A stretch of DNA of 64,000 nt, taken from assembly GCA_950097015.1 (NCBI GenBank), contig CATNEN010000007.1, positions 1,860,001 to 1,924,000 of the forward strand. The letters run 5' to 3'. Below the pieces are notes generated by a model. The model saw only the letters and a list, made by a program, of their open reading frames with translations, ran no database searches and was not told the origin of the DNA. A program made the translations under genes and the position numbers. This stretch comes from Macrostomum hystrix (lineage: Eukaryota > Animalia > Platyhelminthes). Positions 1 to 54,119 of this stretch are shown piece by piece; within the stretch, counting starts at the first letter, position 1; each line of letters begins with the position of its first letter.

Positions 1-1489
1 TTTAGGACCATGCTATCTCAGCTTGGGACGAGCAATCTCAGCCAACATATAAGTTCTATGTTATTCTGTCTATAGTTTTGTTAGCATTTGAAGCTGTTCC
101 GCCAAAATGAGGGCAACCAGCAACGTTGATAGAAGATGCTTGATCTCCGCGTGGAAGGAAGGACAGGATATTGGCTAGCCGCTACAATTCTTGGCATCAA
201 ATTGAAAACCGCTCGCCACATCATTGCCACTTTTGAAGCTACAGGTCGGATTGATGCTCTTCGGCGCGGAGGCCGGAAGATTGGCTCTTGCAAGCTGGAC
301 GATGAGATGCGCCAAGTGCTCATCGGCCTCTTAAATGAAAATCGGATGGCGACACTGAAAGCATTGCAGACTAATCTCGCTGCTCAGCTTCCAGACAAGC
401 CACCGGTCTCCATTAAGACAATAGCCAGAGCTCTGGATGGAGCCCTGTATACATTTAAGATTGCCACTAAGAACTGCGATATTCGATTGAGCGCGAACTC
501 TCCCGCGTTGATAGAGAAGCGACGCGAGTATGCGCTATTCATGGCGGGACTGCAACTGGATACGGTGGTAATCTATATAGACAAGACGGGGTACAACCTC
601 TGGACGCGCAGATCACAGGGAAGGTCGCGACGGGGTCAGCCAGTGAGACGGCGTTGCCCAACACAGAGGGGTCCAAATCTTTCCATCTGTCTGGCCGTGT
701 CATCTGCACTTGGGTTGGTGAAGAGTGAGTTTTTCAGAGGAGGCCAGACAAAGGAGAGGTTTCAACAATTCATCAATGACCTCGTGGAGCAAGTCATCCC
801 GGAAATCGGCAACGCCAGAGTCGTCATAGTCTGCGATGGTCCAAGCTTTCATCGTGGTGTGACAGTGCCGGAGCAGCACCGCCATCAGTTTGAAATTCAG
901 CTGCTGGCCGCTTACTCGCCGTTTCTCAACCCGTGTGAGATGGCTCATAGTGCAGTGAAGGCTTCGATCAAGCTGCAGCTCGCTGACCCCGCACTGGTGG
1001 AGGAAGAAGCTGGTGGCCGACCTGATGGAGTCACCTGCGTGGAATGGCGCATTTTTCTGCTGGAGCGAGTGGGCCGAGACTCTTTGCAAGTTGTGACGTC
1101 AATGAAGGTAGCCAGGTGGGAAATTCACTGCAACCGTAGCTTCCCACAATGCATCCAGGAGGTACCTTTCAACTAAACTGAAATAGTCTGTTAACTGATC
1201 GTCTCTGGTAGCCATTTTTAAAGTTTGCTCTGTATATCCCATCCCATACTCAGTTTTCTGTTACCCAGTTTTTCTCTTGTCAATAGACTTTAAAAATGTT
1301 AACAAAACTATAGACAGAATAACATAGAACTTATATGTTGGCTGAGATTGCTCGTCCCAAGCTGAGATAGCATGGTCTTAAAATGCATGTCTATGGTAAA
1401 AATTAGCAGCTTCAGTAAAAAAACCGCAGTGACAAGATGGGCTGGCTGAGTTTGAATGCCCATAGGCTGAGATAGCCTGACAAAAGCTA
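1..1489 (+). mobile_element. Tc1-like DNA transposon with long terminal inverted repeats (left end cut by window start)
   Basis: Bases 1-89 are the reverse complement of about 1294-1382 with about 2 mismatches. The right TIR probably runs on to a TA near 1488-1491. Internal direct repeats GCTGAGAT(A/T)GC at 1341, 1361 and 1466. Confidence 0.85.
136..1176 (+). CDS. Tc1/mariner-IS630 superfamily DDE transposase, 346 aa, uninterrupted
   Basis: N-terminal HTH-like region, then VIYID-K-TG, VIVCDGPSFH and YSPFLNPCE motifs; 33 residues between the second D and the E (counted by eye). Confidence 0.9.
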   Translation: MLDLRVEGRTGYWLAATILGIKLKTARHIIATFEATGRIDALRRGGRKIGSCKLDDEMRQVLIGLLNENRMATLKALQTNLAAQLPDKPPVSIKTIARALDGALYTFKIATKNCDIRLSANSPALIEKRREYALFMAGLQLDTVVIYIDKTGYNLWTRRSQGRSRRGQPVRRRCPTQRGPNLSICLAVSSALGLVKSEFFRGGQTKERFQQFINDLVEQVIPEIGNARVVIVCDGPSFHRGVTVPEQHRHQFEIQLLAAYSPFLNPCEMAHSAVKASIKLQLADPALVEEEAGGRPDGVTCVEWRIFLLERVGRDSLQVVTSMKVARWEIHCNRSFPQCIQEVPFN

Positions 1490-18394: not shown

Positions 18395-19723
18395 ATGCCA
18401 GTGTTTAAAAAGGCCCGATTTGGCCGATCGCGCACAATCTCCGATGGCGACGATGCCGAAATGCCGGACCTATCAGAGAGCGACCTGGAGGATCGACGCG
18501 GCGGCTCAGCTAGTCTGTCATCGGCGACCCTTCATCACCCGGCCGGCGATGCGGCTGAGGATGATTCCGGCTGCGACAAGGACAACGCCATGCTCTGCTG
18601 CAGAGTACTCTTTCTCTGTCTGTGCTGGTACACAGTCAGTTCCACTAATAACATCATCGGCAAGAGCTTGCTGACTTATTATCCTTATCCAGCTACAGCC
18701 ACACTTTCCCAACTATTGTCTACGGCGATATTTAGCCAACCGCTCGCCGTGTATTGGCGTGTGCCTCACGTGCGCTGGAATCTGATTGGCTGGCGCTATT
18801 ATGCCACAATGATCGTTCCGTTGGCATTTGGCAAATTCATTGCCGCAGTTTCGGCTCACATCTCCATCTGGAAAGTGCCAATCAGCTATGCGCATACTGT
18901 CAAGGCTTCTATGCCTATCTTTGTTGTATTCTTGTCTAGAATTATCTTGCGCGAGCGTCAGACCTGGCTAGTCTATCTATCTCTGACACCAATTGTCGCC
19001 GGCGTGGTGATAGCCACCCTCACCGAGCTCAGCTTTGACATCACCGGGCTGCTTAGCGCCCTACTGGCCACACTGGCCTTCTCATTACAGAATGTTTTCT
19101 CTAAGAAGTGTCTAAAGGAGACCAGAATGCATCATATTCGCCTGCTTCTAGTGCTGGCTAGAATCTCATGCTTGCTGTTCCTTCCCGCCTGGCTACTCGT
19201 GGATGTGCGGCATGTCCTAACTAACTGGGATTCCATGGCTGGCACAGATTGGACCTGGGTTATTGGCCTACTATTGCTAGACGGCTTTTTAAATTTTGCC
19301 CAAAATGTAATCGCATTCACTATGATAGCCCTGGTCAGTCCATTGTCCTACGCTGTTGCCAACGCCAGCAAGAGGATCGCAGTGATTCTGATGTCGCTAG
19401 TCATATTGCAGAATCCTGTTACTACAGCCAACTGTGTAGGCATGGGCATGGCTATCCTAGGTGTACTGCTATATAATAAGGCCAAATACGATCAGAACAA
19501 GGAGGCTCAGCGACTCAAACTTCTGCCCTACGTGAAGTCCGACGCCCAGATGATTAGCCACGATCCGTCTGCTTTGCACGCCTCGCCTTCTATGGTAATA
19601 CCTGTGATGACGCTTGAGGCTGCCGATTCTGCTCATAATGGCGTGTCAGTTTTTCGCGGCCATCATCAGCATCACCAGCCTGATCGCAGAGCAGACAATC
19701 ATCCGTCGTATCGCTATGTGTGA
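18395..19723 (+). CDS. SLC35E1: Solute carrier family 35 member E1 (triose-phosphate translocator family), 442 aa, single ORF
   Basis: LCLCWYTVSSTNNIIGK, SIWKVPISYAHTVKASMPIF, LQNVFSKK and SPLSYAVANASKRI...LLYNKAK motifs; about 10 hydrophobic segments. Confidence 0.93.
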   Translation: MPVFKKARFGRSRTISDGDDAEMPDLSESDLEDRRGGSASLSSATLHHPAGDAAEDDSGCDKDNAMLCCRVLFLCLCWYTVSSTNNIIGKSLLTYYPYPATATLSQLLSTAIFSQPLAVYWRVPHVRWNLIGWRYYATMIVPLAFGKFIAAVSAHISIWKVPISYAHTVKASMPIFVVFLSRIILRERQTWLVYLSLTPIVAGVVIATLTELSFDITGLLSALLATLAFSLQNVFSKKCLKETRMHHIRLLLVLARISCLLFLPAWLLVDVRHVLTNWDSMAGTDWTWVIGLLLLDGFLNFAQNVIAFTMIALVSPLSYAVANASKRIAVILMSLVILQNPVTTANCVGMGMAILGVLLYNKAKYDQNKEAQRLKLLPYVKSDAQMISHDPSALHASPSMVIPVMTLEAADSAHNGVSVFRGHHQHHQPDRRADNHPSYRYV

Positions 19724-23155: not shown

Positions 23156-26073
23156 ATGTCTTCGCCAAGAAAATCTGAAACACCAGCACAATCGATTCTG
23201 AGTTGTGCCACTTTTGTGGAACCGCGAACCGTTGACTCCGTGATTGTCAACAAAGACTCTGCTGGAGATTCCACGAGTGTTGAAAAATACTCAGCTGGAG
23301 ATTCTGCAATTGTCGACAAATACACCTCAGGAGATTCCGCCATTGTCGACAAAGACTCTACTGGAGATTCTGTTAGTGTTGACAAAGACTCAACTGGAGA
23401 TTCCGCGATTGTTGAGAAAGACTGCACAGGATATTCCACCATTGTCGACAAAGACTCTACTGGAGATTCTGCCAGCGTCGACAAAGACTCTACTGGAGAT
23501 TCCGCGATTGTTGACAGAGACTCTATTGGAGATTCTGCCGGTGCTGACAAAGACTTGCTGCAAAGTTTAGCCAGCAACGGCAAGGACTCTGTTTGTATCC
23601 ATGCTAAAGCTAAAAAGAAGTCCAAAAAGTCTGCAGTAAAAAAAGAATCTAATAAAAGTTCTTCCACCATAGAGAATGAAAGGAAGACTTTCGCTAAAGA
23701 AGATGCAGACAATGCCTATGCTCCTGCTGCTGATGTTGAACCACTGATGGAGAAGCATTTGCTGAATAGCTGGTAAGCATTGTGCGTAAAATTGATAGGG
23801 AGATAACTTGATCCTATTATAATTATTAAGTGTAAATAATAATTGGAAAATTTCATTCCATTGTATGAATTGCAGCTGGACTCTTTGGTTCTACAAAAGC
23901 GATCGCGGTCGCGCATGGACAGACAGCCAACTGGCCGTGGCCAGCTTCAACAGCGTTGAAGATTTCTGGCGCCTGACTCGCTACGCCATGCCGCCCAGTC
24001 GGCTGCCTCCTGGCTGTGACTACTCCGTATTCAAAGCCGGCTGTCCTCCGATGTGGGAGGCGCCGGATAATCGCGAAGGCGGCCGGTGGATAGCCAGACT
24101 GGATAGGCGACCCGCTGTCTCCGCCTCGGTGGCCACTGGGCCAGCTGAGACTATTGATGTGGCCTGGACTGAGGTCCTGCTACTGGCCATTGGCGAGTCT
24201 TTCTCCGATCGGGTTGGCAGGCATATTTCCGGATTTGTTGTGCAGGTAAGAAACTCATTTGGTTGTGGATTTCTTTTTTTCATTGGACTATCTTGTCACT
24301 TTCTAGTCCTCATCTTGTCCTTGAATCAGCTGCCTCCCCAATCCTCAGATCCTTCACTCAGCTGCCTCCCCAATCCTCAGATCCTTCACTCAGCTGCCTC
24401 CCCAATCCTCAGATCCTTCACTCAGCTGCCTCCCCAATCCTCAGATCCTTCACTCAGCTGCCTCCCCAATCCTCAGATCCTTCACTCAGCTGCCTCCCCA
24501 ATCCTCAGATCCTTCACTCAGCTGCCTCCCCAATCCTCAGATCCTTCACTCAGCTGCCTCCCCAATCCTCAGATCCTTCACTCAGCTGCCTCCCCAATCC
24601 TCAGATCCTTCACTCAGCTGCCTCCCCAATCCTCAGATCCTTCACTCAGCTGCCTCCCCAATCCTCAGATCCTTCACTCAGCTGCCTCCCCAATCCTCAG
24701 ATCCTTCACTCAGCTGCCTCCCCAATCCTCAGATCCTTCACTCAGCTGCCTCCCCAATCCTCAGATCCTTCACTCAGCTTCCTCTCCAATCCTCAGATCC
24801 TTCACTCAGCTGCCTCCCCAATCCTCAGATCCTTCACTCAGCTTCCTCCCCAATCCTCAGATCCTTCACTCAGCTGCCTCCCCAATCCTCAGATCCTTCA
24901 CTCAGCTGCCTCCCCAATCCTCAGATCCTTCACTCAGCTTCCTCTCCAATCCTCAGATCCATCACTCAGCTTCCTCTCCAATCCTCAGATCCTTCACTCA
25001 GCTGCCTCCCCAATCCTCAGATCCTTCACTCAGCTTCCTCTCCAATCCTCAGATCCTTCACTCAGCTTCCTCTCCAATCCTCAGATCCATCACTCAGCTT
25101 CCTCTCCAATCCTCAGATCCATCACTCAGCTTCCTCCCCAATCCTCAGATCCATCACTCAGCTACTTCCCCAATCCTCAGATCCTTCACTCAGCTGCCTC
25201 TCCAATCCTCAGATCCATCACTCAGCTACTTCCCTAATCCTCAGATCCTTCACTCAGCTGCCTCTCCAATCCTCAGATCCTTCACTCAGCTTCCTCTCCA
25301 ATCCTCAGATCCTTCACTCAGCTTCCTCTCCAATCCTCAGATCCATCACTCAGCTACTTCCCTAATCCTCAGATCCTTCACTCAGCTGCCTCTCCAATCC
25401 TCAGATCCTTCACTCAGCTTCCTCTCCAATCCTCAGATCCATCACTCAGCTACTTCCCTAATCCTCAGATCCTTCACTCAGCTGCCTCTCCAATCCTCAG
25501 ATCCTTCACTCAGCTTCCTCTCCAATCCTCAGATCCTTCACTCAGCTTCCTCTCCAATCCTCAGATCCATCACTCAGCTACTTCCCTAATCCTCAGATCC
25601 TTCACTCAGCTGCCTCTCCAATCCTCAGATCCTTCACTCAGCTGCCTCTCCAATCCTCAGATCCTTCACTCAGCTGCCTCCCCAATCCTCGGATCTTTTA
25701 CTAAGAATTTCAAACAGTTAAAGGCTCAGTTTGCCAGAGCTCAAACCACTGGGCTGCAACCTACCAGCCGCCCTATGCCTTAGAAGGCTCTCAGCTTCAA
25801 CCGAATCCCCATTCGCAGATCCGGCCGCGCCACTACCGCCTGTGTCTTTGGACCAGGCAGGCAGCCGACCAATCAGCTTGTATGGCAGCCGGTCGCCTGT
25901 TCCGTGCGGCTCTGCAGCGCTGCTACGGCGCCGCCGACTGTCCGTCTCTGGCCTACGAGGCCCACTCGGAGTTGCAGCGCTTCTCGGCGACTCGCAGGGC
26001 CGCATTCGCCTCCTGCCGTGGCGGCAGCGCAGGTTTTGTCAGTCGCAAACCGAAGCAGATCTATTATCTGTAG
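23156..26073 (+). CDS. EIF4E: Eukaryotic translation initiation factor 4E family protein (class I-like), about 413 aa, with repetitive N-terminal extension
   Basis: Exons 23156-23772, 23876-24245, 25819-26073 (phases 2 and 0). HLLNSCWTLW, RAWT, VEDFW, DYSVFK, PMWE, GGRW, WTEVLLLAIGESF, IRPRHYRLCLW and YEAH all align with the eIF4E core. Confidence 0.92.
24327..25690. repeat. 32-bp minisatellite (CTCAGCTGCCTCCCCAATCCTCAGATCCTTCA), about 42 copies, in eIF4E intron 2
   Basis: Tandem copies; variants accumulate toward the 3' side. Confidence 0.97.
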
Positions 26074-43900: not shown

Positions 43901-46900
43901 CCTATGACCTGGGAACACCTGTTCCTATGACCTGGGAACCCCTGTTCCTATGACCTGGGAACCCCTGTTCCTATGACCTGGGAACCCTGTTCCTATGACC
44001 TGGGAACCCCTGTTCCTATGACCTGGGAACCCCTGTTCCTATGACCTGGGAACCCTGTTCCTATGACCTGGGAACCCCTGTTCCTATGACCTGGGAACCC
44101 CTGTTCCTATGACCTGGGAACCCCTGTTCCTATGACCTGGGAACCCCTGTTCCTATGACTTGGGAACCCCTGTTCCTATGACCTGGGAACCCCGGTCCCT
44201 TAATTTAAACACCTGTTCCAATGACCTGGGTTAAAATAACATCCTATATTTCTATAAATTTCTAAAACACCTGTTCCTTAATGTTGGAAACACCTGTTCC
44301 TAATGTTTGAAACACCTGTTCCTAATGTTTGAAACACCTGTTCCTGATCTTCTTCATCTTCAGCTTCTTCTAGAAGACAGGAAGGAATATAAATTTCAAT
44401 TACTCCTGTACTTAACTGGCATTTGCTAATTTGGCTAATTTATTAATTAGTCCCAGTAATTAGCTAATTTCTTGAGCTAATAGGATGCAAAGTTTGAAGT
44501 GGGCCAAGCACTTCAGCGCCCCTTGCTAATTTTATAATTACGATAGCAAATTTAGTCTGTTAAATAATTGACATTACACTCAGAGCACCAATTGTTTCTG
44601 AGCACACGTTTAATTTCATTTTTATTAGTTGCATCTCAATTTCACTGAAGCCACTCTGGACTCACTCACAGTAGATTCCTAGTGGCTACTCAACACTCAG
44701 TGGCGATTGTTCCACAGGGCATGGCAACCCCAGAACTGCTAATAATATTCCACTTTGATATGATTCAGTATCATCTATTTGCTATTCATTCCAGCATAGT
44801 GTAACTTTGAAATTTTATATTTTACGGATCATTTTATTTATTGAATTTACTCTCTAAGTTGGTCTATACCCATTTCAATTTGAACTCATTCGGTGGGTCA
44901 TTGCCCTCCCTAATTGAGTCATTTGGACTAGTCATTACCCTCCCTGATTGGGTCATTTGGACTAGTCATTACCCTCCCAGTCATATGGATTGGTCATTAA
45001 CACCCAATCTAGTCATTTGGAGGGTCATTAACACCCAATCTAGTTATTTGGATTGGTCATTTCCCTCATCTTGAGTCTATTCAAAGACAATTGTCCCACT
45101 TCGGAAGGAAAAATATGTTTATGTGGCCTCCTTATGCCAATGATTTTTTATGCAGCCAATTTTCCCCTATAAGCACGCATCGAAATCCCATTCTGAGCAG
45201 ACCTCATGCTGATAACCTACCTGACTCAGAGGCCTGGACTCAGAGCGAAGCGGATCATGCAGCTGCTGCTGCTGCTGCGCCGACAAATCGGTCTGACCCG
45301 GCTTGATGCCGAGAAACGCCGCCGGATCCGCCGGGCCGCCCTTCTGTCGAACCCGCCTGGAAGCCGCGCCCGCCTGACCGCCGGCCGGCCTCCCAAAACA
45401 GGCGCCGAGGACGTCTGGCACGAAGCTGGGAGCCGAGTGCCAGTGCCTGGCGTACAGCAGCAGCAGCATGGTTGCCAATAGCAACAGCAGGGCGAACACG
45501 CCGACTACGGCCAGGACAACCGTGTCGCCGAGCTGCTGCTGCTGCTGCCGCGGTCTTCGCTGCTGACGGTCGACTCCGTCCGCACCGTTAGGCGGCAGCA
45601 TCGGTGGTTGCGCCTTCGAGTTGGCGCCTCCCCTGTCAGCGCCGCGGCTTCTCGGCTCCGAGTCGTCGATGGTCACGTCGAAGACGCACTCCGTTGAGAG
45701 CTGGCGCGGCTGACCGGCGTCGGTGGCTGTCACCGTCAGGCGCCGAACACCCCGATCCCAACTGGTCATCCGCAGCGCCACGCGGACCTCACCGCCACTG
45801 GAATCAACGCTGAACAGTTGCTGCCGGGCTGGCTGCCCCGGCATCGCGGCCGAGTCGTCTCTCAGGCTGAACTGGAAGCGCCCGTTGCCAGATTTGTCCC
45901 AGTCGTCGTCCTTGGCGTTGACCTTCAGCACCGTGTAGCCAACCGGCTCCCGCCAGGAAACGCTGTGATTTCTCAGCGAGCCAAGAACAATGGAACTTCG
46001 GTTCGGAGCTCCCACCGGGCCTCCACCGCCGCCGCCTCCGCACGGGTAGAAAATCTGAGGCGGATGTTCGTTGACATCTTCAACAATGACCGTGACGGTG
46101 GCGCTAGTTGAGAACTGACCGTCGCTGGCCAGCAGCAGGAATCGATACTCGGCCTGGCGCTCGGCGTCCAGCCGGTCCGTGGCCTCGATTAGAAACTCGT
46201 CCGGGTCGACGACCGCTCCGCCGCCGCCGAGTCCGGCATCTCCACCAAGCGTCGGCCGAACCTGGAACGGCAGGCGACCCGTGGACGCCGAGCCGGGCGC
46301 TGGCGCCAGCGACACTCGCCTCCTTCGACGATGCCAGTCGGCGTCGGAGCCGTAGTCGGCGTCGACAATCCGTAGCCGACCAACTGCCGCTCCGGCGGGA
46401 TTGTTCTCAGTCAGCCGGAACTCCAGCCCGCCGGTCAGCGAAGTCGAGCCAGCCGTGGTCAGCGGCACGATGACTGGCGGATTGTCGTTCTCGTCAATCA
46501 GGCGGATGCGCAGGGTCAGGACAGAGCTCATCGGCGTCGGGCTGCCGCGATCCCGCGCCATCACCAACACTCGGAAACTGTCTATGGGTGGAATGGAGGC
46601 CTCGCGATCAAGCTGCCGTCGAGTGACGAGGTGGCCGTCCGGCAGCACCTGGAAGGCGTCCAGAGCGGCCGCCTCGGTGCCGGACGCGTCGATGCTGAAG
46701 TCCACCGTGCCGTTGTCGCCAAAGTCCAAATCGTAGGCGTCGATTTTGGCGACTCGGTAGCCGGCCTCGCGATTCTCCGGCACGCTCGCGGTTGGCGCGT
46801 CGTCCGCGACTCCAGCGACAGTGCTGGAAGACTTCAGTCGCATCGTCGGCGCATTGTCGTTGATGTCGCTAATCAGTACGGTGGCGTTAACGGTACGCGA

Positions 46901-49018
46901 GTTCGCCGGCTTGCCACCGTCCCGGCAGACGATGCCGACGCTGAGTTTGACGACCTCTCGCCGAGCAGCCAGGGGCCCGAGGCTCAGGTGGGTCTCCCGG
47001 TCCAGTCCCGGCCCGCCGTCCCTGGTGCCCAGGTAGAAACGCCAGCGCTGCGGCTGCTGTGACGAAGCTGAAGGCAGGCGGGCCGTGCCGGAGCCGGCGG
47101 CTGGCATCAGCTCGAACACTTCGCGATGCCGCTGGTCGTCGATCTCGCAGGAGACGCGCCCGTTGTCGCCGCGGTCCCGGTCTGTGGCCTGCAGCGCAGC
47201 CAGAGTCCGGCCGCGCCGGTCGTTCTCCGTCACCTGCCGTGTGGAATAGAATAGAGTACAATAGAGTAGAATAGAATAGAAATGAGTAGAATAGAATAGA
47301 GTAGAATAGAACAGAATAGAATGGAATAGAAAGAAATAGAATGGAACGGAATAGAATAGAGTAGAATGGAATAGGATTCAATATAGAAGAAACTCATTGC
47401 GCCTAAGCACGGTTGCCCAGACGTACAGCCAGTGGCAGAGCCGAAGGCTACTTAAAGTCTGTCACAGCATTCCGCTGACTCACCTCTGCCGCACCGTCGA
47501 GATAATCGAGCTGCAACTGCGGCACCTCGTCGTTCTCGTCCACCACCAGCACGGTGACGGTGGCCGTTGCCAGGCGGTTGTCGCCCGCGGCCCCGGCTGA
47601 TCCCGGCGAGACCCGAATCGGCGTGGGATTCCTGGCGATCACCGCCAGCTCGAAGGACTCCCTGGCCTCGTAGTCCAGACTGCGGCGCAGGCAGATCAGC
47701 CCCCTGTCAGGCGACACCAGGAAGCTCTCAGCCGCAGCCTGGAGGTCGGGCTGGTGCGGGTCCAGCTCGTAGATGACTCGGCCGTTTTCGCCATAGTCAG
47801 GATCAGAGGCCACCAGGCGGGTCGGGCAGCCGCCCGGCTGGTCGGATTCGCGAACCCGCACAGTCACGTGACCCACCGGGTGAAACTGAGGCCGGTTGTC
47901 GTTGACGTCCGTGACGTTGATGACTAAACGCAGGCTGGCGTTCTGGCCGTCCCGATCCGAAGCAATCTGGGATAAATGGGTCATGAGAAGGGCCACGGAT
48001 TAGCTCATGAGCTGTGGTCATAAGAGGAGGAGAGCAGTGGATGAGGAATTGTGTATGAGTATTAGGAAAATGCTTGACTCTGCCCCAGGACGGTGATTGG
48101 TCGGCGAGGGAGTTGGGGTGGGGGCTGGGTGGGTGGTGTCGGTCGGGTCATACCTCTCCCCACCCCTACACACCAACCCCTCATACTCTTCCCAGCCCTA
48201 CGCTCGTACATGCCGACCCCTCATACTCCTCCCTACCCCTACACACTGTACCCACCCACCCCCACCCCACCTCCTTCACCGACCAATCACCGCCCTGTGG
48301 CAGAGTGGAGCATTTTCCTACTACTTGCGGTTCCCACCAGTGCGAGGTTGTGCACGGCGGCGGTCTCCCTGTCCAGCCTGTCCAGCAGCTCCAAGAACAG
48401 CTGGGCGATGCGGGATCCCCGGCCGCCACCGGCCCGATCCTCGCGCAGGCCGAAGAGTCCGTTGCTAGGCAGCAGCGAGTAGCCGGAAACCGCGTTGACG
48501 TCAGCGTCTGGATCCACCGCCAGCGGCAGGCGCACCAGATGGCCCGGCTGGGAATCCTCGCTGATGACGATACGGCGTTCAGTTTCCCGGAAGCTGGGCC
48601 GGTGGTCGTTGATGTCGCGCAGGCCGACAATGATGGAGACTTCGCGCGGAGCTCCTGGATGCCGACGATCAAGAAAGTGCAGCGTCAGGGCGCAGACGTC
48701 AGCGGCCGAGTCGCAGCAGAGCCGGTTATCGGCGCACATGGCCTCTCGATCGAGGCGCTTCTTGACCAGCAGCTCGGGCTGGCCTGAGCCGTCACGGAGC
48801 CGGTACTCAAAGTACGGGTCCGGCGGAGTCATTGCGCAACAGCCGGGAATGTCGAGGCCACGATGGGCCAGGGCGTTGCGAAGCTCCGCCGGCTGACTGC
48901 CCTCCGGCAGCTCTTCGTCGATGGTGGCGTCTGGCGCGATGGTTGCTGCTGCTGCTGTTGCTGCTATGGCTACTAGGAGCAGAATTTTCTGTTTTAGAAG
49001 ACGGAATTGAGATAGCAT
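34993..49018 (-). CDS. Protocadherin with seven cadherin repeats (delta1-like), about 1290 aa
   Basis: Exons 49018-48338, 47966-47484 and 47233-45221 are firm and encode the signal peptide, 7 EC repeats (LDRE, DxNDxxP) and the TM segment. Exons 40057-39834 and 35455-34993 are inferred from phase compatibility (0/2, then 2/stop). Confidence 0.88.
35570..35948. repeat. 28-bp minisatellite (CCCAGGTGGGGAAATAGCGTGGTCTTTT)
   Basis: About 13 tandem copies. Confidence 0.96.
36993..38135. repeat. 24-bp minisatellite (TCTCCTGACACCCTAGCTACTGTC) grading into a ~22-bp degenerate relative
   Basis: Homogeneous to about 37600, then TCTCCTGACATCCTACTTTCTC-type units. Confidence 0.95.
40765..41085. repeat. 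44-bp minisatellite containing ATTGG (CCAAT on the - strand), about 7 copies
   Basis: Unit CTGATTGGCTGACAACCCAACTCACACCATTCCACCCTTCTTCA. Confidence 0.93.
43270..43530 (-). mobile_element. CORE-type tRNA-derived SINE, family A, best copy
   Basis: On the - strand: GTAGCTTAGTGGTTAAAG (A box), ACTCGATTCCCG (B-box-like), then TGTCCTTCAGCAAGACAATTAA...CTTCAGTTCACCCAGCTGTTAAATGGGTACC resembling the MIR/CORE domain, then a tail. Confidence 0.75.
43895..44195. repeat. 23-bp minisatellite (CCCCTGTTCCTATGACCTGGGAA)
   Basis: About 13 tandem copies. Confidence 0.95.
47245..47385. repeat. (TAGAA)n microsatellite in protocadherin intron 2
   Basis: Visible pentamer run. Confidence 0.9.
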
Positions 49019-50900: not shown

Positions 50901-51674
50901 CGTACGTACTTTCTTTTTCTAAAAAGAAAGTTTAGAAACATTTAGATTCAATAGTTTTCAAGCTCGCGACATAAGTAAGAACTCAATGGAACAGAGGCAA
51001 GAGAAAAATGAGAACCAGCAATTTACCAATCTCCTTTTTATTGCTGTCAGTAAATTGGCAAACTGACTAGCAACTAGCAAAGTTTCCCTATCACAATTTC
51101 ACACTGAGGGACTCATCAAATGTAGTGTGCGATAAAAGCTGCAACCGAATGGAATGATGCCAATATCAGGGAATATCGGACATCCCCTGAGATTACTCAG
51201 AATGACTATAAATTTTGGAATGCGCGCTCGCAGACTAGAAAATTGCACTGAGAAATGAATATATTTGAGAGACAGATGAAAAAACTACGGATTTTTTGCT
51301 TATAATCTTACTTCCAGTAGAATAAATAGAAGCGGGAGTTGAAATTCTCGCTGAATAATAAAATCTAATATACTAAAAATGAAAATCTTGCTTGCTTGCT
51401 TGCTTGTCTAATATACTAAAAATGAAAAAGACGCTATTTCGATTTATCGAAGATTCATAGCAAAATAATTTTGTGCTCAAATTGTCAACTGCATCAGGAA
51501 CAGTTTTTTTCGATATCGCTTTCAAAGATCACCTGTCTGATCGGCCCAGTCAAGCTTGATAGAAATTTAGAAAAAAAAGTATGCGACGATTGGTGAAGTG
51601 TATTTATTAACCGCCATTTTATTTCGCCATAACCAGTTTTCAACGAAGTGTGCTCAATAAGCCAGCTGTGCTCA

Positions 51675-53258
51675 TCAGCGACCCGGACCGCCCGGCTTGA
51701 GCATGTGGTTGATCTGGTCCAGGATTTCTGCGCCATATTCTGCGTCGCAGTGGCCGCCGAGGTCCAGCACTCCGCAGGCGCGCTTGCTGCACGGGCGAGG
51801 TTTGGCGGAGGTGAAATGAAGACTCTTTTTTTTTTTTTTTTTTTTAATTGCAGGGGGGCCTGGGGCACTTGACGCACAAGCGCAGGAACGGCATGCCCCA
51901 GGCCGGCGAACTAGGCGGGAGTCGCCCATCGCGCCATCTAGACCCCTGAACACAGGCACCTCATACACAGCCGCAAGCCAAGCGGGGAAGGGGGCGGCAG
52001 CCGGAGTGCCTCTCACCCCAGGCCCGCACACGCACAGAGCTGACCAAACAAGGGGAGGACTTACATGCCTGAAGGGTAGGGACGAGAGGAACAAGCCACG
52101 CGCGCAGACGGCTGGTGAAACCTCGCCGCTCAGAGCACGCATGGCTGGTGCACACCCGCCCCACCCCCCATACAACGCCTCACACCCGGCCCAACGCACA
52201 AACACAAACACAAACAAGCAGGCATGCAGAAGGCAGGAGCGAAGCTATTATTTCAAGCTTTGATTGCACGAAATATGGTGCACCTCCGCCGGTCGCTACT
52301 GTCCAAACCCCCCCAACAAGTCCCGAAATTAATCGTGACTTGAAGGGTGAATCGAACTAGCGTCCTTTGGAGTGCGAGGCAGCGACGTTAGCCGCTGACC
52401 CACTCGCCCCCTAAATCAAGACTCCCTCTCATTATCTTTCATCGTCACATTATGACTGACAGGTCAAGCATGATTGATTGTGGTGACTCACCGCAGAGCA
52501 GTGACTTGCCTCTGGATGCCCTGCTTGAGTGACAGGGCCTGCACCAGCAGGTTAGCCAGCTTGTGTAGATCGCTGAAATTTCATGTTTAATTTGGGCTAA
52601 ATTTAGTTTTACCCAGAACGGAAACGAACCCGGGACCTTCTGCGATTGTAAGCGACGCGCTAAACCGCCAAGCTAGATTGAGACCCAACCCGTTTGTAAG
52701 ACAAATAATGCATTTCAAATGTATTCAGACTGACCTGTCGGCAATTTTCATGGTGTGCAGGGCGTCGCGGGTGCGCAGCAGCAAATCTCGGTACATTGCC
52801 TGGCGCCTGTGTTTTATTGATAGCGATTCGGATATTCAGAGAAGCGAGCCTTCAAGTAGTACACCTCTGCTAAAATGCTACATTAAGTCTGAACGAGCTG
52901 TAGCGCGACAATGAAAAGGCTGCGTACAGCTGTTCAGTCCATGGAATGAATCAACTGGGAATCCAATTGCCGAAAATATATTATCTATGATAGAAAAAGA
53001 AAACAGCTGGGTGAACTGAAATAGGAAAGAATTAATGTGCCTTGCTCAGGAATACGAAAAGCTCTTATGATTTGGCCACAATACTTTAACAAAGAGCTAT
53101 AACACAGGGTCCAGCAGCACCCACTGAGTTTGTTTGGTGTCGTCTGCCGTCATGGCAGTCGCGGATGTTTGCTGAGCGCCGTCAATGGCTGAAGTGGGGC
53201 TCGAACTCGCGACTGCCAAGGTTAGCAGCGTCAGGATTAGCACAGCGCACGGGTTCAT
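51675..53258 (-). CDS. Calcitonin/DH31-type neuropeptide precursor, 132 aa
   Basis: Exons 53258-53125, 52806-52735, 52572-52492, 51786-51675; all GT-AG, all phase 2. Signal peptide MNPCAVLILTLLTLAVASS, a pro-region, then KR-ACGVLDLGGHCDAEYGAEILDQINHMLKPGGP-GR-stop. AATAAA at 51608-51603. Confidence 0.88.
51826..52412 (-). mobile_element. Full-length tRNA-derived SINE, family C, with poly(A) tail and target-site duplication
   Basis: Head GGGGGCGAGTGGGTCAGCGG...GTTCGATTCACCC; about 20-nt poly(A) from 51826; flanking AAAT(G/C)AAGACTC at 51814-51825 and 52413-52424. Confidence 0.78.
52915..53070 (-). mobile_element. CORE-type SINE fragment, family A, inside a neuropeptide gene intron
   Basis: GGCTGCGTACAGCTGTTCAGTCCATGG and ACAGCTGGGTGAACTGAA...GTGCCTTGCTCAGGA. 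Confidence 0.6.
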
Positions 53259-54119
53259 GATATCCTTCGCACCTGAATAAATGGGAAATAAAGATTTCCA
53301 ATTATTTGAGTCGGTTGCCAGCTGCAGCCCAACAAATATTAACTCACCGCTCAGAGCTGGGAACAGGGAAATTCAAACACAGATCCAAAAGTCAGGCGTG
53401 AGAATCTTTGATCACAAAATCTCCTCTAAATCAAGACCTGATCACGCTGCTGGCTGCAGAGCTCTATATATGCTCTGACAAACAAGTGAACAAACAAGAC
53501 AAGAATAAGACTCGAGCCAATATTTGCATCCGAATGGCTTCATCACAGAGCCCTATAACTGTCATCTCGGCTTGGCTGCCTTTTCTCATCTTTTTTAATT
53601 TAGTTTCCAAACCTTGAGCAGGTGCAAAACAGGCGAGTAGACGTCGCGGAGGCATCTCGTGGCCGTCCAGCAAGCTTTAATTAATAAAAGTTTGAGTCCG
53701 CTACAGTTATCGACATTTTTAATCTTCCAGAATCGAGCATCGAACGTGACAAAAAGTCGTCTGCTTTGCCAGTCGCGGCTTGTAGCCGACCGAAATGGCT
53801 TCATTTAATCTGGCTCGTATCATTTCTGATAAAGAGGCCTTTGATTTAGAAGCCTGTGGCAGGAATGTTGCATAGACGCGAAAGCAAGAGACGGGTATAA
53901 ATTTATTGCCACCAGGAAGTTGCCTTAAAGTGCGGGTCTCGCCGAATGCCGGCAAAGTCAATAAACAAAGCCAAGGTGTTGAAATTAGAAACTTCTTATT
54001 GCGATAAGAATATAGTCCAGCGAAAACTAGCTAATAACAACAATTGTTATTAACTGATAGGGTCAGCTGAAATGATACTTCATTTCATTTTCATAGCTGC
54101 AGTTCTGGCTATGGATTGC

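What the first reader, a model, noticed from the sequence alone, without database searches (positions are those of the whole stretch)
51675..53258. Hidden four-exon calcitonin/DH31-type neuropeptide gene with a hybrid 32-residue amidated peptide
Seen: four small GT-AG exons, all phase 2, splice into a 132-aa precursor with a signal peptide and a single terminal peptide, KR|ACGVLDLGGHCDAEYGAEILDQINHMLKPGGP|GR-stop, followed by AATAAA. Established: calcitonin is 32 aa with an N-terminal disulfide ring and a C-terminal Pro-amide, while arthropod DH31 lacks Cys but has an N-terminal (L/V)D(L/F)G motif and ends in GGP-amide. Inference: this peptide combines both. It is 32 aa with a Cys2-Cys11 ring, LDLG lies inside the ring, and it ends GGP-NH2. 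It could therefore link the calcitonin and DH31 branches in a probable flatworm. No ORF in the track shows the precursor, so automated annotation could miss it. Whether it is already described cannot be judged from the sequence.
Basis: partly seen in the sequence, partly recalled or inferred. Interest (0 to 1): 0.92.

Follow-up and report, generated by a model that had tools for sequence, protein, structure and literature searches.

The report
Flatworm calcitonin-type neuropeptide gene

Summary
Four minus-strand GT-AG, phase-2 coding exons splice into a 132-aa secreted precursor. It ends RKR | ACGVLDLGGHCDAEYGAEILDQINHMLKPGGP | GR-stop. Spliced contigs from four public runs (two studies) carry exactly the three predicted junctions, and they add one 5' non-coding exon.

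The syntenic M. lignano orthologue, annotated only as "hypothetical protein", has the same four phase-2 coding exons. Its peptide is 31/32 identical, with dN/dS about 0.02 at dS about 0.8.

The "hybrid" reading fails. Published nemertean, phoronid and brachiopod calcitonins already have the in-ring L-x-L-G-G-H-C motif, 7-9 residues between the cysteines in protostomes, and Pro-amide ends.
- A profile of eight such peptides scores the Macrostomum peptide 19.7 bits; none of 5000 shuffles reaches this.
- A DH31 profile scores -2.1 bits.

So this is a new member of the known cysteine-containing lophotrochozoan calcitonin family. The only earlier flatworm mention I found is in a polyclad larva. The differences are minor: a single peptide per precursor, a GGP-amide end, and a strongly conserved helical propeptide. 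Receptor pairing and peptide processing remain untested.

The parts
53348..53423 (-). 5' non-coding exon. The contigs of runs X1 and X2 both stop exactly at 53423, just after a genomic AG (53425-53424). This could be a spliced-leader acceptor or the transcript start (inferred).
   Evidence: tables 5 and 8: joint 53269|53345 with cut +3, which equals 53272|53348. Sequence.
53273..53347 (-). 75-nt 5'UTR intron, GTGAGT...AG.
   Evidence: joint seen in three runs; sequence.
53125..53272 (-). First coding exon. The ATG is at 53258-53256. It encodes the signal peptide (53258-53208, 17 aa, AVA|SSS) and the fast-evolving N-terminal part of the propeptide.
   Evidence: Mean hydropathy of residues 4-17 is 2.74. 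dN/dS is 0.54.
52735..52806 (-). Second coding exon (72 nt, phase 2), encoding propeptide.
   Evidence: dN/dS is 0.18.
52492..52572 (-). Third coding exon (81 nt, phase 2), encoding conserved helical propeptide. It is 26/27 aa identical to M. lignano.
   Evidence: dN/dS is 0.037. Predicted helix, low confidence.
51675..51786 (-). Fourth coding exon. KR cleavage site at 51785-51780; mature 32-aa peptide at 51779-51684; amidation Gly at 51683-51681; Arg at 51680-51678; stop at 51677-51675.
   Evidence: Calcitonin profile score 19.7 bits. It is the only such hit in a six-frame scan. dN/dS is 0.022.
51593..51674 (-). Proximal 3' UTR with two AATAAA signals (51623-51618 and 51608-51603). One run's contig ends at 51593; others run on to 51476 or past 51400.
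   Evidence: table 8.

Best explanation
This is an expressed five-exon gene (four coding exons) of a Macrostomum flatworm. It encodes a prepro-calcitonin of the cysteine-containing lophotrochozoan type.

Shown here:
- the exon structure and its splicing in RNA-derived contigs;
- a syntenic orthologue in M. lignano with the same intron phases;
- very strong purifying selection on the last two exons;
- specific sequence similarity of the terminal peptide to published nemertean, phoronid and brachiopod calcitonins.

Inferred from the established processing rules for neuropeptide precursors:
- the signal peptide is removed after Ala17;
- a prohormone convertase cuts after Arg-Lys-Arg;
- a carboxypeptidase removes the final Arg;
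- peptidylglycine alpha-amidating monooxygenase turns the Gly into a C-terminal Pro-amide;
- Cys2 and Cys11 form a 10-membered-residue ring followed by an amphipathic helix.

The product would be an acidic 32-mer with a calculated monoisotopic mass of 3289.53 Da. It most likely signals through a class B (secretin-type) calcitonin/DH31-type GPCR and raises cAMP, as shown for oyster calcitonins. That step is inferred, not tested.
For: - Exons, phases and translation.
- Splice joints identical in four runs from two studies, with contigs at 0-1 mismatches.
- M. lignano proteins PAA59768, PAA50059 and PAA67779 and A0A1I8GFH5 carry the same peptide with one Ile-to-Leu change.
- The M. lignano locus has the same four phase-2 coding exons and the same downstream cadherin gene.
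- dN/dS is 0.022 (exon 4) and 0.037 (exon 3) at dS 0.7-0.9, against 0.54 in exon 1.
- An HMM of eight published lophotrochozoan calcitonin peptides (sequences from PMC8557429 supplement) scores the peptide 19.7 bits; the best of 5000 shuffles scores 8.9.
- In a six-frame scan of the window plus the M. lignano locus, the only hits are exon 4 and its orthologue, at E 0.002.
- Pairwise z-scores are 4.2-8.9 against all eight calcitonins, with 0/1000 shuffles reaching them.
- The eight-residue Cys spacing fits the protostome range of 7-9: PMC6002491.
- The amphipathic core has a hydrophobic moment of 0.415, reached by 1.8% of shuffles. AlphaFold puts a helix at peptide residues 13-27, at low confidence.
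Against: - No database-wide sequence search links it to calcitonins. Pfam gave nothing.
- A full HMMER scan of 1.84 billion representatives found only Macrostomum proteins and two chance hits.
- The propeptide does not match a profile of calcitonin propeptides: 1.3 bits, with 626/5000 shuffles as good.
- Family assignment therefore rests on about 30 residues.
- The precursor holds one peptide, whereas most published lophotrochozoan precursors hold two or more.
- No receptor, tissue, mass-spectrometry or activity data exist.
- One BLAST-based paper reports no CGRP-receptor homologue in Platyhelminthes (PMC10725132). Secretin-type receptors are nevertheless known in flatworms (PMC3261222; PMC6114109).
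Confidence: 0.85

Rival explanations
1. One reading: the peptide is a structural hybrid or intermediate that links the calcitonin and DH31 branches. It could preserve the state before the protostome duplication, or act on both receptor types.
For: It has LDLG, with Asp as in arthropod DH31 GLDLGL, and it ends GGP-amide like arthropod DH31. Its best DH31 pairwise match, to Ixodes, reaches z 3.5.
Against: The LxLGG(H)C motif in the ring is standard in published lophotrochozoan calcitonins. The DH31 profile scores -2.1 bits against 19.7 for calcitonin. Most DH31 pairwise z-scores are 0.6-2.2. GGP and FGP ends also occur in brachiopod calcitonin-1 peptides. The literature already treats DH31 as a Cys-less protostome paralogue of calcitonin (PMC3890597; PMC8557429).
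Confidence: 0.06
2. It is a lineage-specific secreted Macrostomum peptide that only converges on calcitonin features (Cys ring, helix, Pro-amide). It might have a non-neuronal role.
For: No significant hit outside Macrostomum in a 1.84-billion-protein HMMER scan. No Pfam hit. No propeptide similarity. The language-model search returns generic neuropeptide precursors of several families. There are no tissue data.
Against: Eleven to thirteen identities, including the contiguous LGGHC, in register with ring, helix and C-terminus, against every one of eight calcitonins from three phyla. The length, Cys spacing and processing sites all fit. Short peptide hormones rarely reach database-wide significance.
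Confidence: 0.08
3. It is a chance ORF or pseudogene with no function.
For: None beyond the small size of the exons.
Against: It is spliced and polyadenylation-consistent in four runs. The orthologue is intact, with dN/dS 0.02 at dS about 0.8. A second M. lignano paralogue keeps the same peptide core.
Confidence: 0.01

Closest known systems
Lophotrochozoan calcitonin, terminal ('CT2-like') peptide of nemertean, phoronid and brachiopod precursors (Thiel et al. 2021, PMC8557429). Functionally characterised in the oyster (Schwartz et al. 2019, cited).
   Same: A KR cleavage site, then x-C-(x)-L-x-L-G-G-H-C. An acidic helix follows, with conserved Glu, Ala and Asp positions. The peptide is about 31-32 residues and ends Pro-Gly-basic. 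It is the last peptide of the precursor. Profile score 19.7 bits.
   Different: There is one extra residue in the ring (8 between the cysteines against 6-7 in the eight comparators). It has Asp instead of Asn in LxLGG. It ends GGP-amide instead of SP-amide. The precursor holds only this one peptide and no CT1-type peptide, as in the nemertean Malacobdella sequence. The propeptide is not detectably similar.
DH31 (calcitonin-like diuretic hormone) of arthropods, annelids, nemerteans and brachiopods
   Same: Same superfamily. Similar length, a C-terminal (G)GP-amide in arthropods, and an N-terminal LDLG-like motif.
   Different: DH31 lacks the cysteine pair, which is its defining difference (PMC3890597, PMC6002491). 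The DH31 profile scores the peptide -2.1 bits.
Vertebrate calcitonin and echinoderm ArCT
   Same: An N-terminal disulfide ring, a central amphipathic helix and a C-terminal Pro-amide. Vertebrate calcitonin is also 32 residues (PMC6002491).
   Different: Deuterostome rings have 4-5 residues between the cysteines, against 8 here. I tested no direct sequence similarity, because no tool-derived vertebrate sequences were in hand.
Calcitonin transcript reported in the polyclad flatworm Prostheceraeus crozieri larva (Piovani et al. 2023, PMC10396302; review PMC13551398)
   Same: A calcitonin-type precursor in Platyhelminthes, expressed in neurons there.
   Different: It comes from a different flatworm order.

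Membership tests
Calcitonin-type neuropeptide precursor (cysteine-containing, protostome/lophotrochozoan type) | Secreted precursor: an N-terminal signal peptide, with the peptide flanked by basic cleavage sites | tested here: met
   Hydrophobic core at residues 4-17 (mean Kyte-Doolittle 2.74) with an AVA|S site. RKR lies before the peptide and GR-stop after it. No SignalP run was possible.
Calcitonin-type neuropeptide precursor (cysteine-containing, protostome/lophotrochozoan type) | A pair of N-terminal cysteines, with 7-9 residues between them in protostomes (PMC6002491) | tested here: met
   Cys2 and Cys11, with 8 residues between. The disulfide itself is not shown.
Calcitonin-type neuropeptide precursor (cysteine-containing, protostome/lophotrochozoan type) | C-terminal Pro followed by Gly (amide donor) and a basic residue | tested here: met
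   ...KPGGP-G-R-stop here, and GRR-stop in M. lignano. Amidation itself is not shown.
Calcitonin-type neuropeptide precursor (cysteine-containing, protostome/lophotrochozoan type) | Central amphipathic alpha-helix | tested here: met
   Hydrophobic moment 0.415 for residues 12-27, reached by 1.8% of shuffles. AlphaFold helix at peptide residues 13-27, but pLDDT is only about 55-60.
Calcitonin-type neuropeptide precursor (cysteine-containing, protostome/lophotrochozoan type) | Sequence similarity to accepted family members | tested here: met
   Profile of 8 published peptides: 19.7 bits, 0/5000 shuffles. Six-frame scan E 0.002. Pairwise z 4.2-8.9. Database-wide searches were silent.
Calcitonin-type neuropeptide precursor (cysteine-containing, protostome/lophotrochozoan type) | Two or more calcitonin-like peptides per precursor, as is usual in brachiopods, phoronids and most nemerteans | tested here: not met
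   Only one peptide. There is no CT1-type exon anywhere in the window. This is not a strict criterion, since the Malacobdella precursor also has one.
Calcitonin-type neuropeptide precursor (cysteine-containing, protostome/lophotrochozoan type) | Ligand of a calcitonin/DH31-type class B GPCR | not testable with these tools
Secretin-type receptors exist in other flatworms.
DH31 (Cys-less calcitonin paralogue) | Absence of the N-terminal cysteine pair | tested here: not met
   Two cysteines are present and conserved in all three Macrostomum sequences (output).
DH31 (Cys-less calcitonin paralogue) | Sequence similarity to DH31 peptides | tested here: not met
   The DH31 profile scores -2.1 bits, with 3478 of 5000 shuffles as good.

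The most novel reading that the evidence does not exclude
The roughly 50-residue helical propeptide encoded by exons 2-3 is 86% identical between the two species, and exon 3 is 26/27 identical with dN/dS 0.037. That makes it as constrained as the hormone itself, so it could be a second bioactive product or an obligatory partner of the hormone. Alternatively, this single-ligand flatworm calcitonin, with Asp in LDLGG and a GGP-amide end, may serve both lophotrochozoan calcitonin/DH31 receptor clusters. That would make Macrostomum a minimal system for resolving the unsettled ligand-receptor pairing described in PMC8557429.
Probability: 0.12. Interest if true: 0.5.

Novelty: new member of a known kind. 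Interest (0 to 1): 0.3.

Why it matters
The neuropeptide complements of flatworms are poorly sampled. Planarians and parasitic flatworms are said to have lost several ancestral bilaterian peptides. In the papers I could search, calcitonin is mentioned for only one polyclad larva.

A clearly calcitonin-type gene in Macrostomorpha, an early-branching rhabditophoran lineage, shows that the system was kept there. Its M. lignano orthologue and a second paralogue are unnamed in public records. M. lignano is a laboratory model species (recalled from general knowledge, not from a tool result), so it could be used to ask what cysteine-containing calcitonins do in protostomes. Cai et al. (2018) described that question as completely unknown.

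The finding does not change the picture of calcitonin/DH31 evolution.

Tried and rejected
- Pfam on the exon-4 peptide, the 180-aa ORF containing it, and exon 1: no hit even at E 10.
- Rfam and ARAGORN on the window: nothing. My impression that introns 2 and 3 hold tRNA-derived SINEs was not supported by these tools or by BLAST within the window.
- ESM Atlas feature search: only generic neuropeptide-precursor neighbours, with DH31 clusters at ranks 2-3 and NPFF at rank 1, all at 0.90. I treated this as a lead only.
- Full HMMER scan with the M. lignano orthologue: nothing outside Macrostomum.
- Word-index searches: only the M. lignano cluster.
- Propeptide homology to other calcitonin propeptides (the 'ARKRxxL' look-alike LLRTRDAL): not significant.
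- CT1-type or alternative calcitonin exon in the introns: none. RNA contigs show a single isoform.
- Locus of the second M. lignano paralogue: not on record.
- Polyclad calcitonin sequence: not in the held supplement.
- Exact-sequence look-ups of four window ORFs: absent from the collection, consistent with a species other than M. lignano.
- Receptor search: not possible, because no calcitonin-receptor sequence was available by reference.
- The 132-aa spliced protein has no reference, so it was never sent to a database tool. The exon-4 ORF with a 'region' setting and the M. lignano orthologue served as proxies.

Full report
**Anatomy.** On the minus strand the window holds four small coding exons: 53258-53125, 52806-52735, 52572-52492 and 51786-51675. 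All introns are GT..AG and each leaves two bases of a split codon (phase 2). The 399-nt reading frame gives a 132-aa protein.
- It starts with a hydrophobic signal sequence. Residues 4-17 have a mean hydropathy of 2.74, with an AVA|SSS cleavage context.
- An approximately 76-residue propeptide without dibasic sites follows.
- It ends RKR-ACGVLDLGGHCDAEYGAEILDQINHMLKPGGP-GR-stop.
- Two AATAAA signals follow, at 51623-51618 and 51608-51603.

**Transcripts.** One search for sequencing runs found eight holders in two studies. Their share of sampled words was 0.16-0.41; the four runs laid held 0.30-0.41, roughly what exons alone would give by my own estimate. I laid four of them on 51400-53600. In every run one contig joins 51786|52492, 52572|52735 and 52805/6|53124/5, with 0-1 mismatches.
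- Three runs also join 53272|53348. This reveals a 76-nt non-coding first exon (53423-53348) and a 75-nt GT-AG intron. The gene therefore has five exons.
- No alternative last exon or second isoform was seen.
- Two contigs stop exactly at 53423, right after a genomic AG. That would fit spliced-leader addition or the transcript start. This is inference only.
- One contig ends at 51593, 10 nt past the second AATAAA. Others continue beyond 51400, so longer 3' UTRs exist.
- These are assembled contigs, so they show presence and splicing, not expression level or strand.

**Organism and orthologue.** I searched with the ORF that contains exon 4, restricted to its last 40 residues. It hit one cluster, Macrostomum lignano 'hypothetical protein BOX15_Mlig031819' (97% identity). 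Its members are PAA59768, PAA50059 and PAA67779, plus UniRef A0A1I8GFH5, 'conserved secreted protein'.
- The M. lignano locus (L001) aligns to the window at DNA level only over exons 3 and 4, at 84-86%.
- It has the same four coding exons, all phase 2.
- It is followed by the same cadherin gene as in the window.

It is therefore the syntenic orthologue in a different species. Earlier notes of this scan also call the genome a Macrostomum other than M. lignano, and four window ORFs are absent as exact sequences from the public collection.

Between the two species the mature peptide differs by one Ile/Leu. dN/dS by exon:

| Exon | dN/dS | dS |
|---|---|---|
| Exon 4 | 0.022 | 0.86 |
| Exon 3 | 0.037 | 0.71 |
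| Exon 2 | 0.18 | 1.60 |
| Exon 1 | 0.54 | 1.41 |

A full HMMER scan of 1.84 billion representative proteins found one more relative, M. lignano A0A1I8FBD4. Its peptide is YCGFLDLGGHCDAMHGAELLDQILHLSRPGGP-GKRRKR. The scan found nothing outside the genus except two chance hits.

**Family.** The supplement of Thiel et al. 2021 (PMC8557429) lists calcitonin precursors of nemerteans, phoronids and brachiopods. Their last peptide reads, for example, NCLVNLGGHCATETAAAIADMYHYLNSAESP-GRKKR (Cerebratulus/Lineus) or HCLNLGGHCSIEGAANLHDTYRYYNSALSP-GRR (Phoronis). The Macrostomum peptide aligns in register with these: Cys, L-x-L-G-G-H-C, then Glu, Ala, Ile/Leu and Asp in the helix, then the terminal Pro-Gly-basic.

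| Test | Result |
|---|---|
| HMM of eight terminal calcitonin peptides | 19.7 bits (M. lignano peptides 18.7 and 13.4); best of 5000 shuffles 8.9 |
| HMM of the other ('CT1-type') calcitonin peptides | 1.1 bits |
| HMM of seven DH31 peptides | -2.1 bits |
| Calcitonin profile against all six-frame ORF pieces of the window plus L001 (2262 pieces) | only exon 4 and its orthologue, E 0.002 |
| Pairwise global alignment to the eight calcitonins | z 4.2-8.9, 0/1000 shuffles |
| Pairwise global alignment to CT1-type and DH31 peptides | z 0.6-3.8 |

Other features also fit.
- Eight residues between the cysteines lies within the 7-9 reported for protostome calcitonins, against 4-5 in deuterostomes (PMC6002491).
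- The core DAEYGAEILDQINHML is amphipathic: hydrophobic moment 0.415, reached by 1.8% of shuffles.
- A low-confidence AlphaFold model of the orthologue (mean pLDDT 61) puts a helix there and a long helix through the propeptide.

Weak points remain.
- Pfam is silent.
- The propeptide is not detectably similar to other calcitonin propeptides.
- The family assignment rests on about 30 residues.

**The 'hybrid' claim.** The in-ring L-x-L-G-G motif is the signature of lophotrochozoan calcitonins, and it probably reflects the common origin of calcitonin and DH31. GGP, GGP-like or FGP ends also occur in brachiopod calcitonin-1 peptides. Protostomes have been known since 2013 to carry both a Cys-containing calcitonin and a Cys-less DH31 from an early duplication (PMC3890597; PMC6002491; PMC8557429). 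The peptide is a calcitonin, not a bridge.

**Mechanism.** The steps are inferred from general prohormone processing and from oyster and annelid receptor work cited.
- The signal peptide is removed.
- A convertase cleaves after RKR.
- A carboxypeptidase trims the terminal Arg.
- The Gly is converted to a C-terminal Pro-amide.
- Cys2 and Cys11 form a disulfide.
- The acidic 32-mer (calculated mass 3289.53 Da) is released and acts on a class B calcitonin/DH31-type receptor.

I could not look for the receptor, because no receptor sequence was available by reference. Published surveys report secretin-type receptors in schistosomes, planarians and Fasciola, including one 'diuretic-hormone-receptor-like' pair. 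One BLAST-based study found no CGRP-receptor homologue in flatworms.

**Novelty.** In the searchable literature, calcitonin in flatworms appears only as a marker transcript in a polyclad larva (PMC10396302). A 2026 review repeats this and states that planarians and parasites have lost such peptides (PMC13551398). No paper combining Macrostomum, neuropeptide and calcitonin describes this gene. One note reports parathyroid-hormone-like peptides in the same genome, another class B ligand family; I did not test it.

The finding is therefore a new member of a known family. Its small peculiarities are one peptide per precursor, an extra ring residue, a GGP-amide end and a strikingly conserved helical propeptide. 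It is worth annotating and useful for flatworm neurobiology, but it is not surprising to a specialist.

Noticed in passing
window 52492-52806 (exons 2-3): The propeptide encoded here is about 86% identical between the two Macrostomum species. Exon 3 is 26/27 identical with dN/dS 0.037, so it is as constrained as the hormone. It is predicted to be one long helix. The second M. lignano paralogue (A0A1I8FBD4) lacks it.
   Followed up: partly
M. lignano protein P0002 (UniRef A0A1I8FBD4): A second, more divergent calcitonin-type paralogue in M. lignano. The 255-aa model continues for about 160 residues after the GKRRKR site. This may be a read-through of the gene model. Its locus was not on record.
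   Followed up: partly
window 45167-48916, minus strand: A cadherin-domain gene lies directly downstream of the calcitonin gene. The same gene, in the same order and orientation, lies in the M. lignano locus (66-78% amino-acid identity in tblastx pieces).
   Followed up: partly
window 53464-53470 and 53423-53425: A TATATAG motif lies about 40 nt upstream of the point where two independent contigs stop (53423), and that point follows a genomic AG. This could be a promoter plus a spliced-leader acceptor. Neither is verified.
   Followed up: no
window 52219-52410 and 52880-52953 (introns 3 and 1): Many unrelated contigs with high depth and diverging ends map here, so these intron pieces are interspersed repeats transcribed elsewhere. 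They look tRNA-like by eye, but ARAGORN, Rfam and BLAST within the window gave no support.
   Followed up: partly
window 18395-19723, plus strand: An intronless 442-aa ORF with a complete triose-phosphate/nucleotide-sugar transporter (TPT) domain, E 3.5e-86.
   Followed up: no
window 136-1176, plus strand: A 346-aa ORF with DDE_3 endonuclease and HTH domains, consistent with a DDE-type transposase.
   Followed up: no
window 23865-25589, plus strand: A 574-aa ORF whose first 130 residues match eIF4E. The rest has no domain. It lies in a GC-rich stretch with strongly negative GC skew (-0.48).
   Followed up: no
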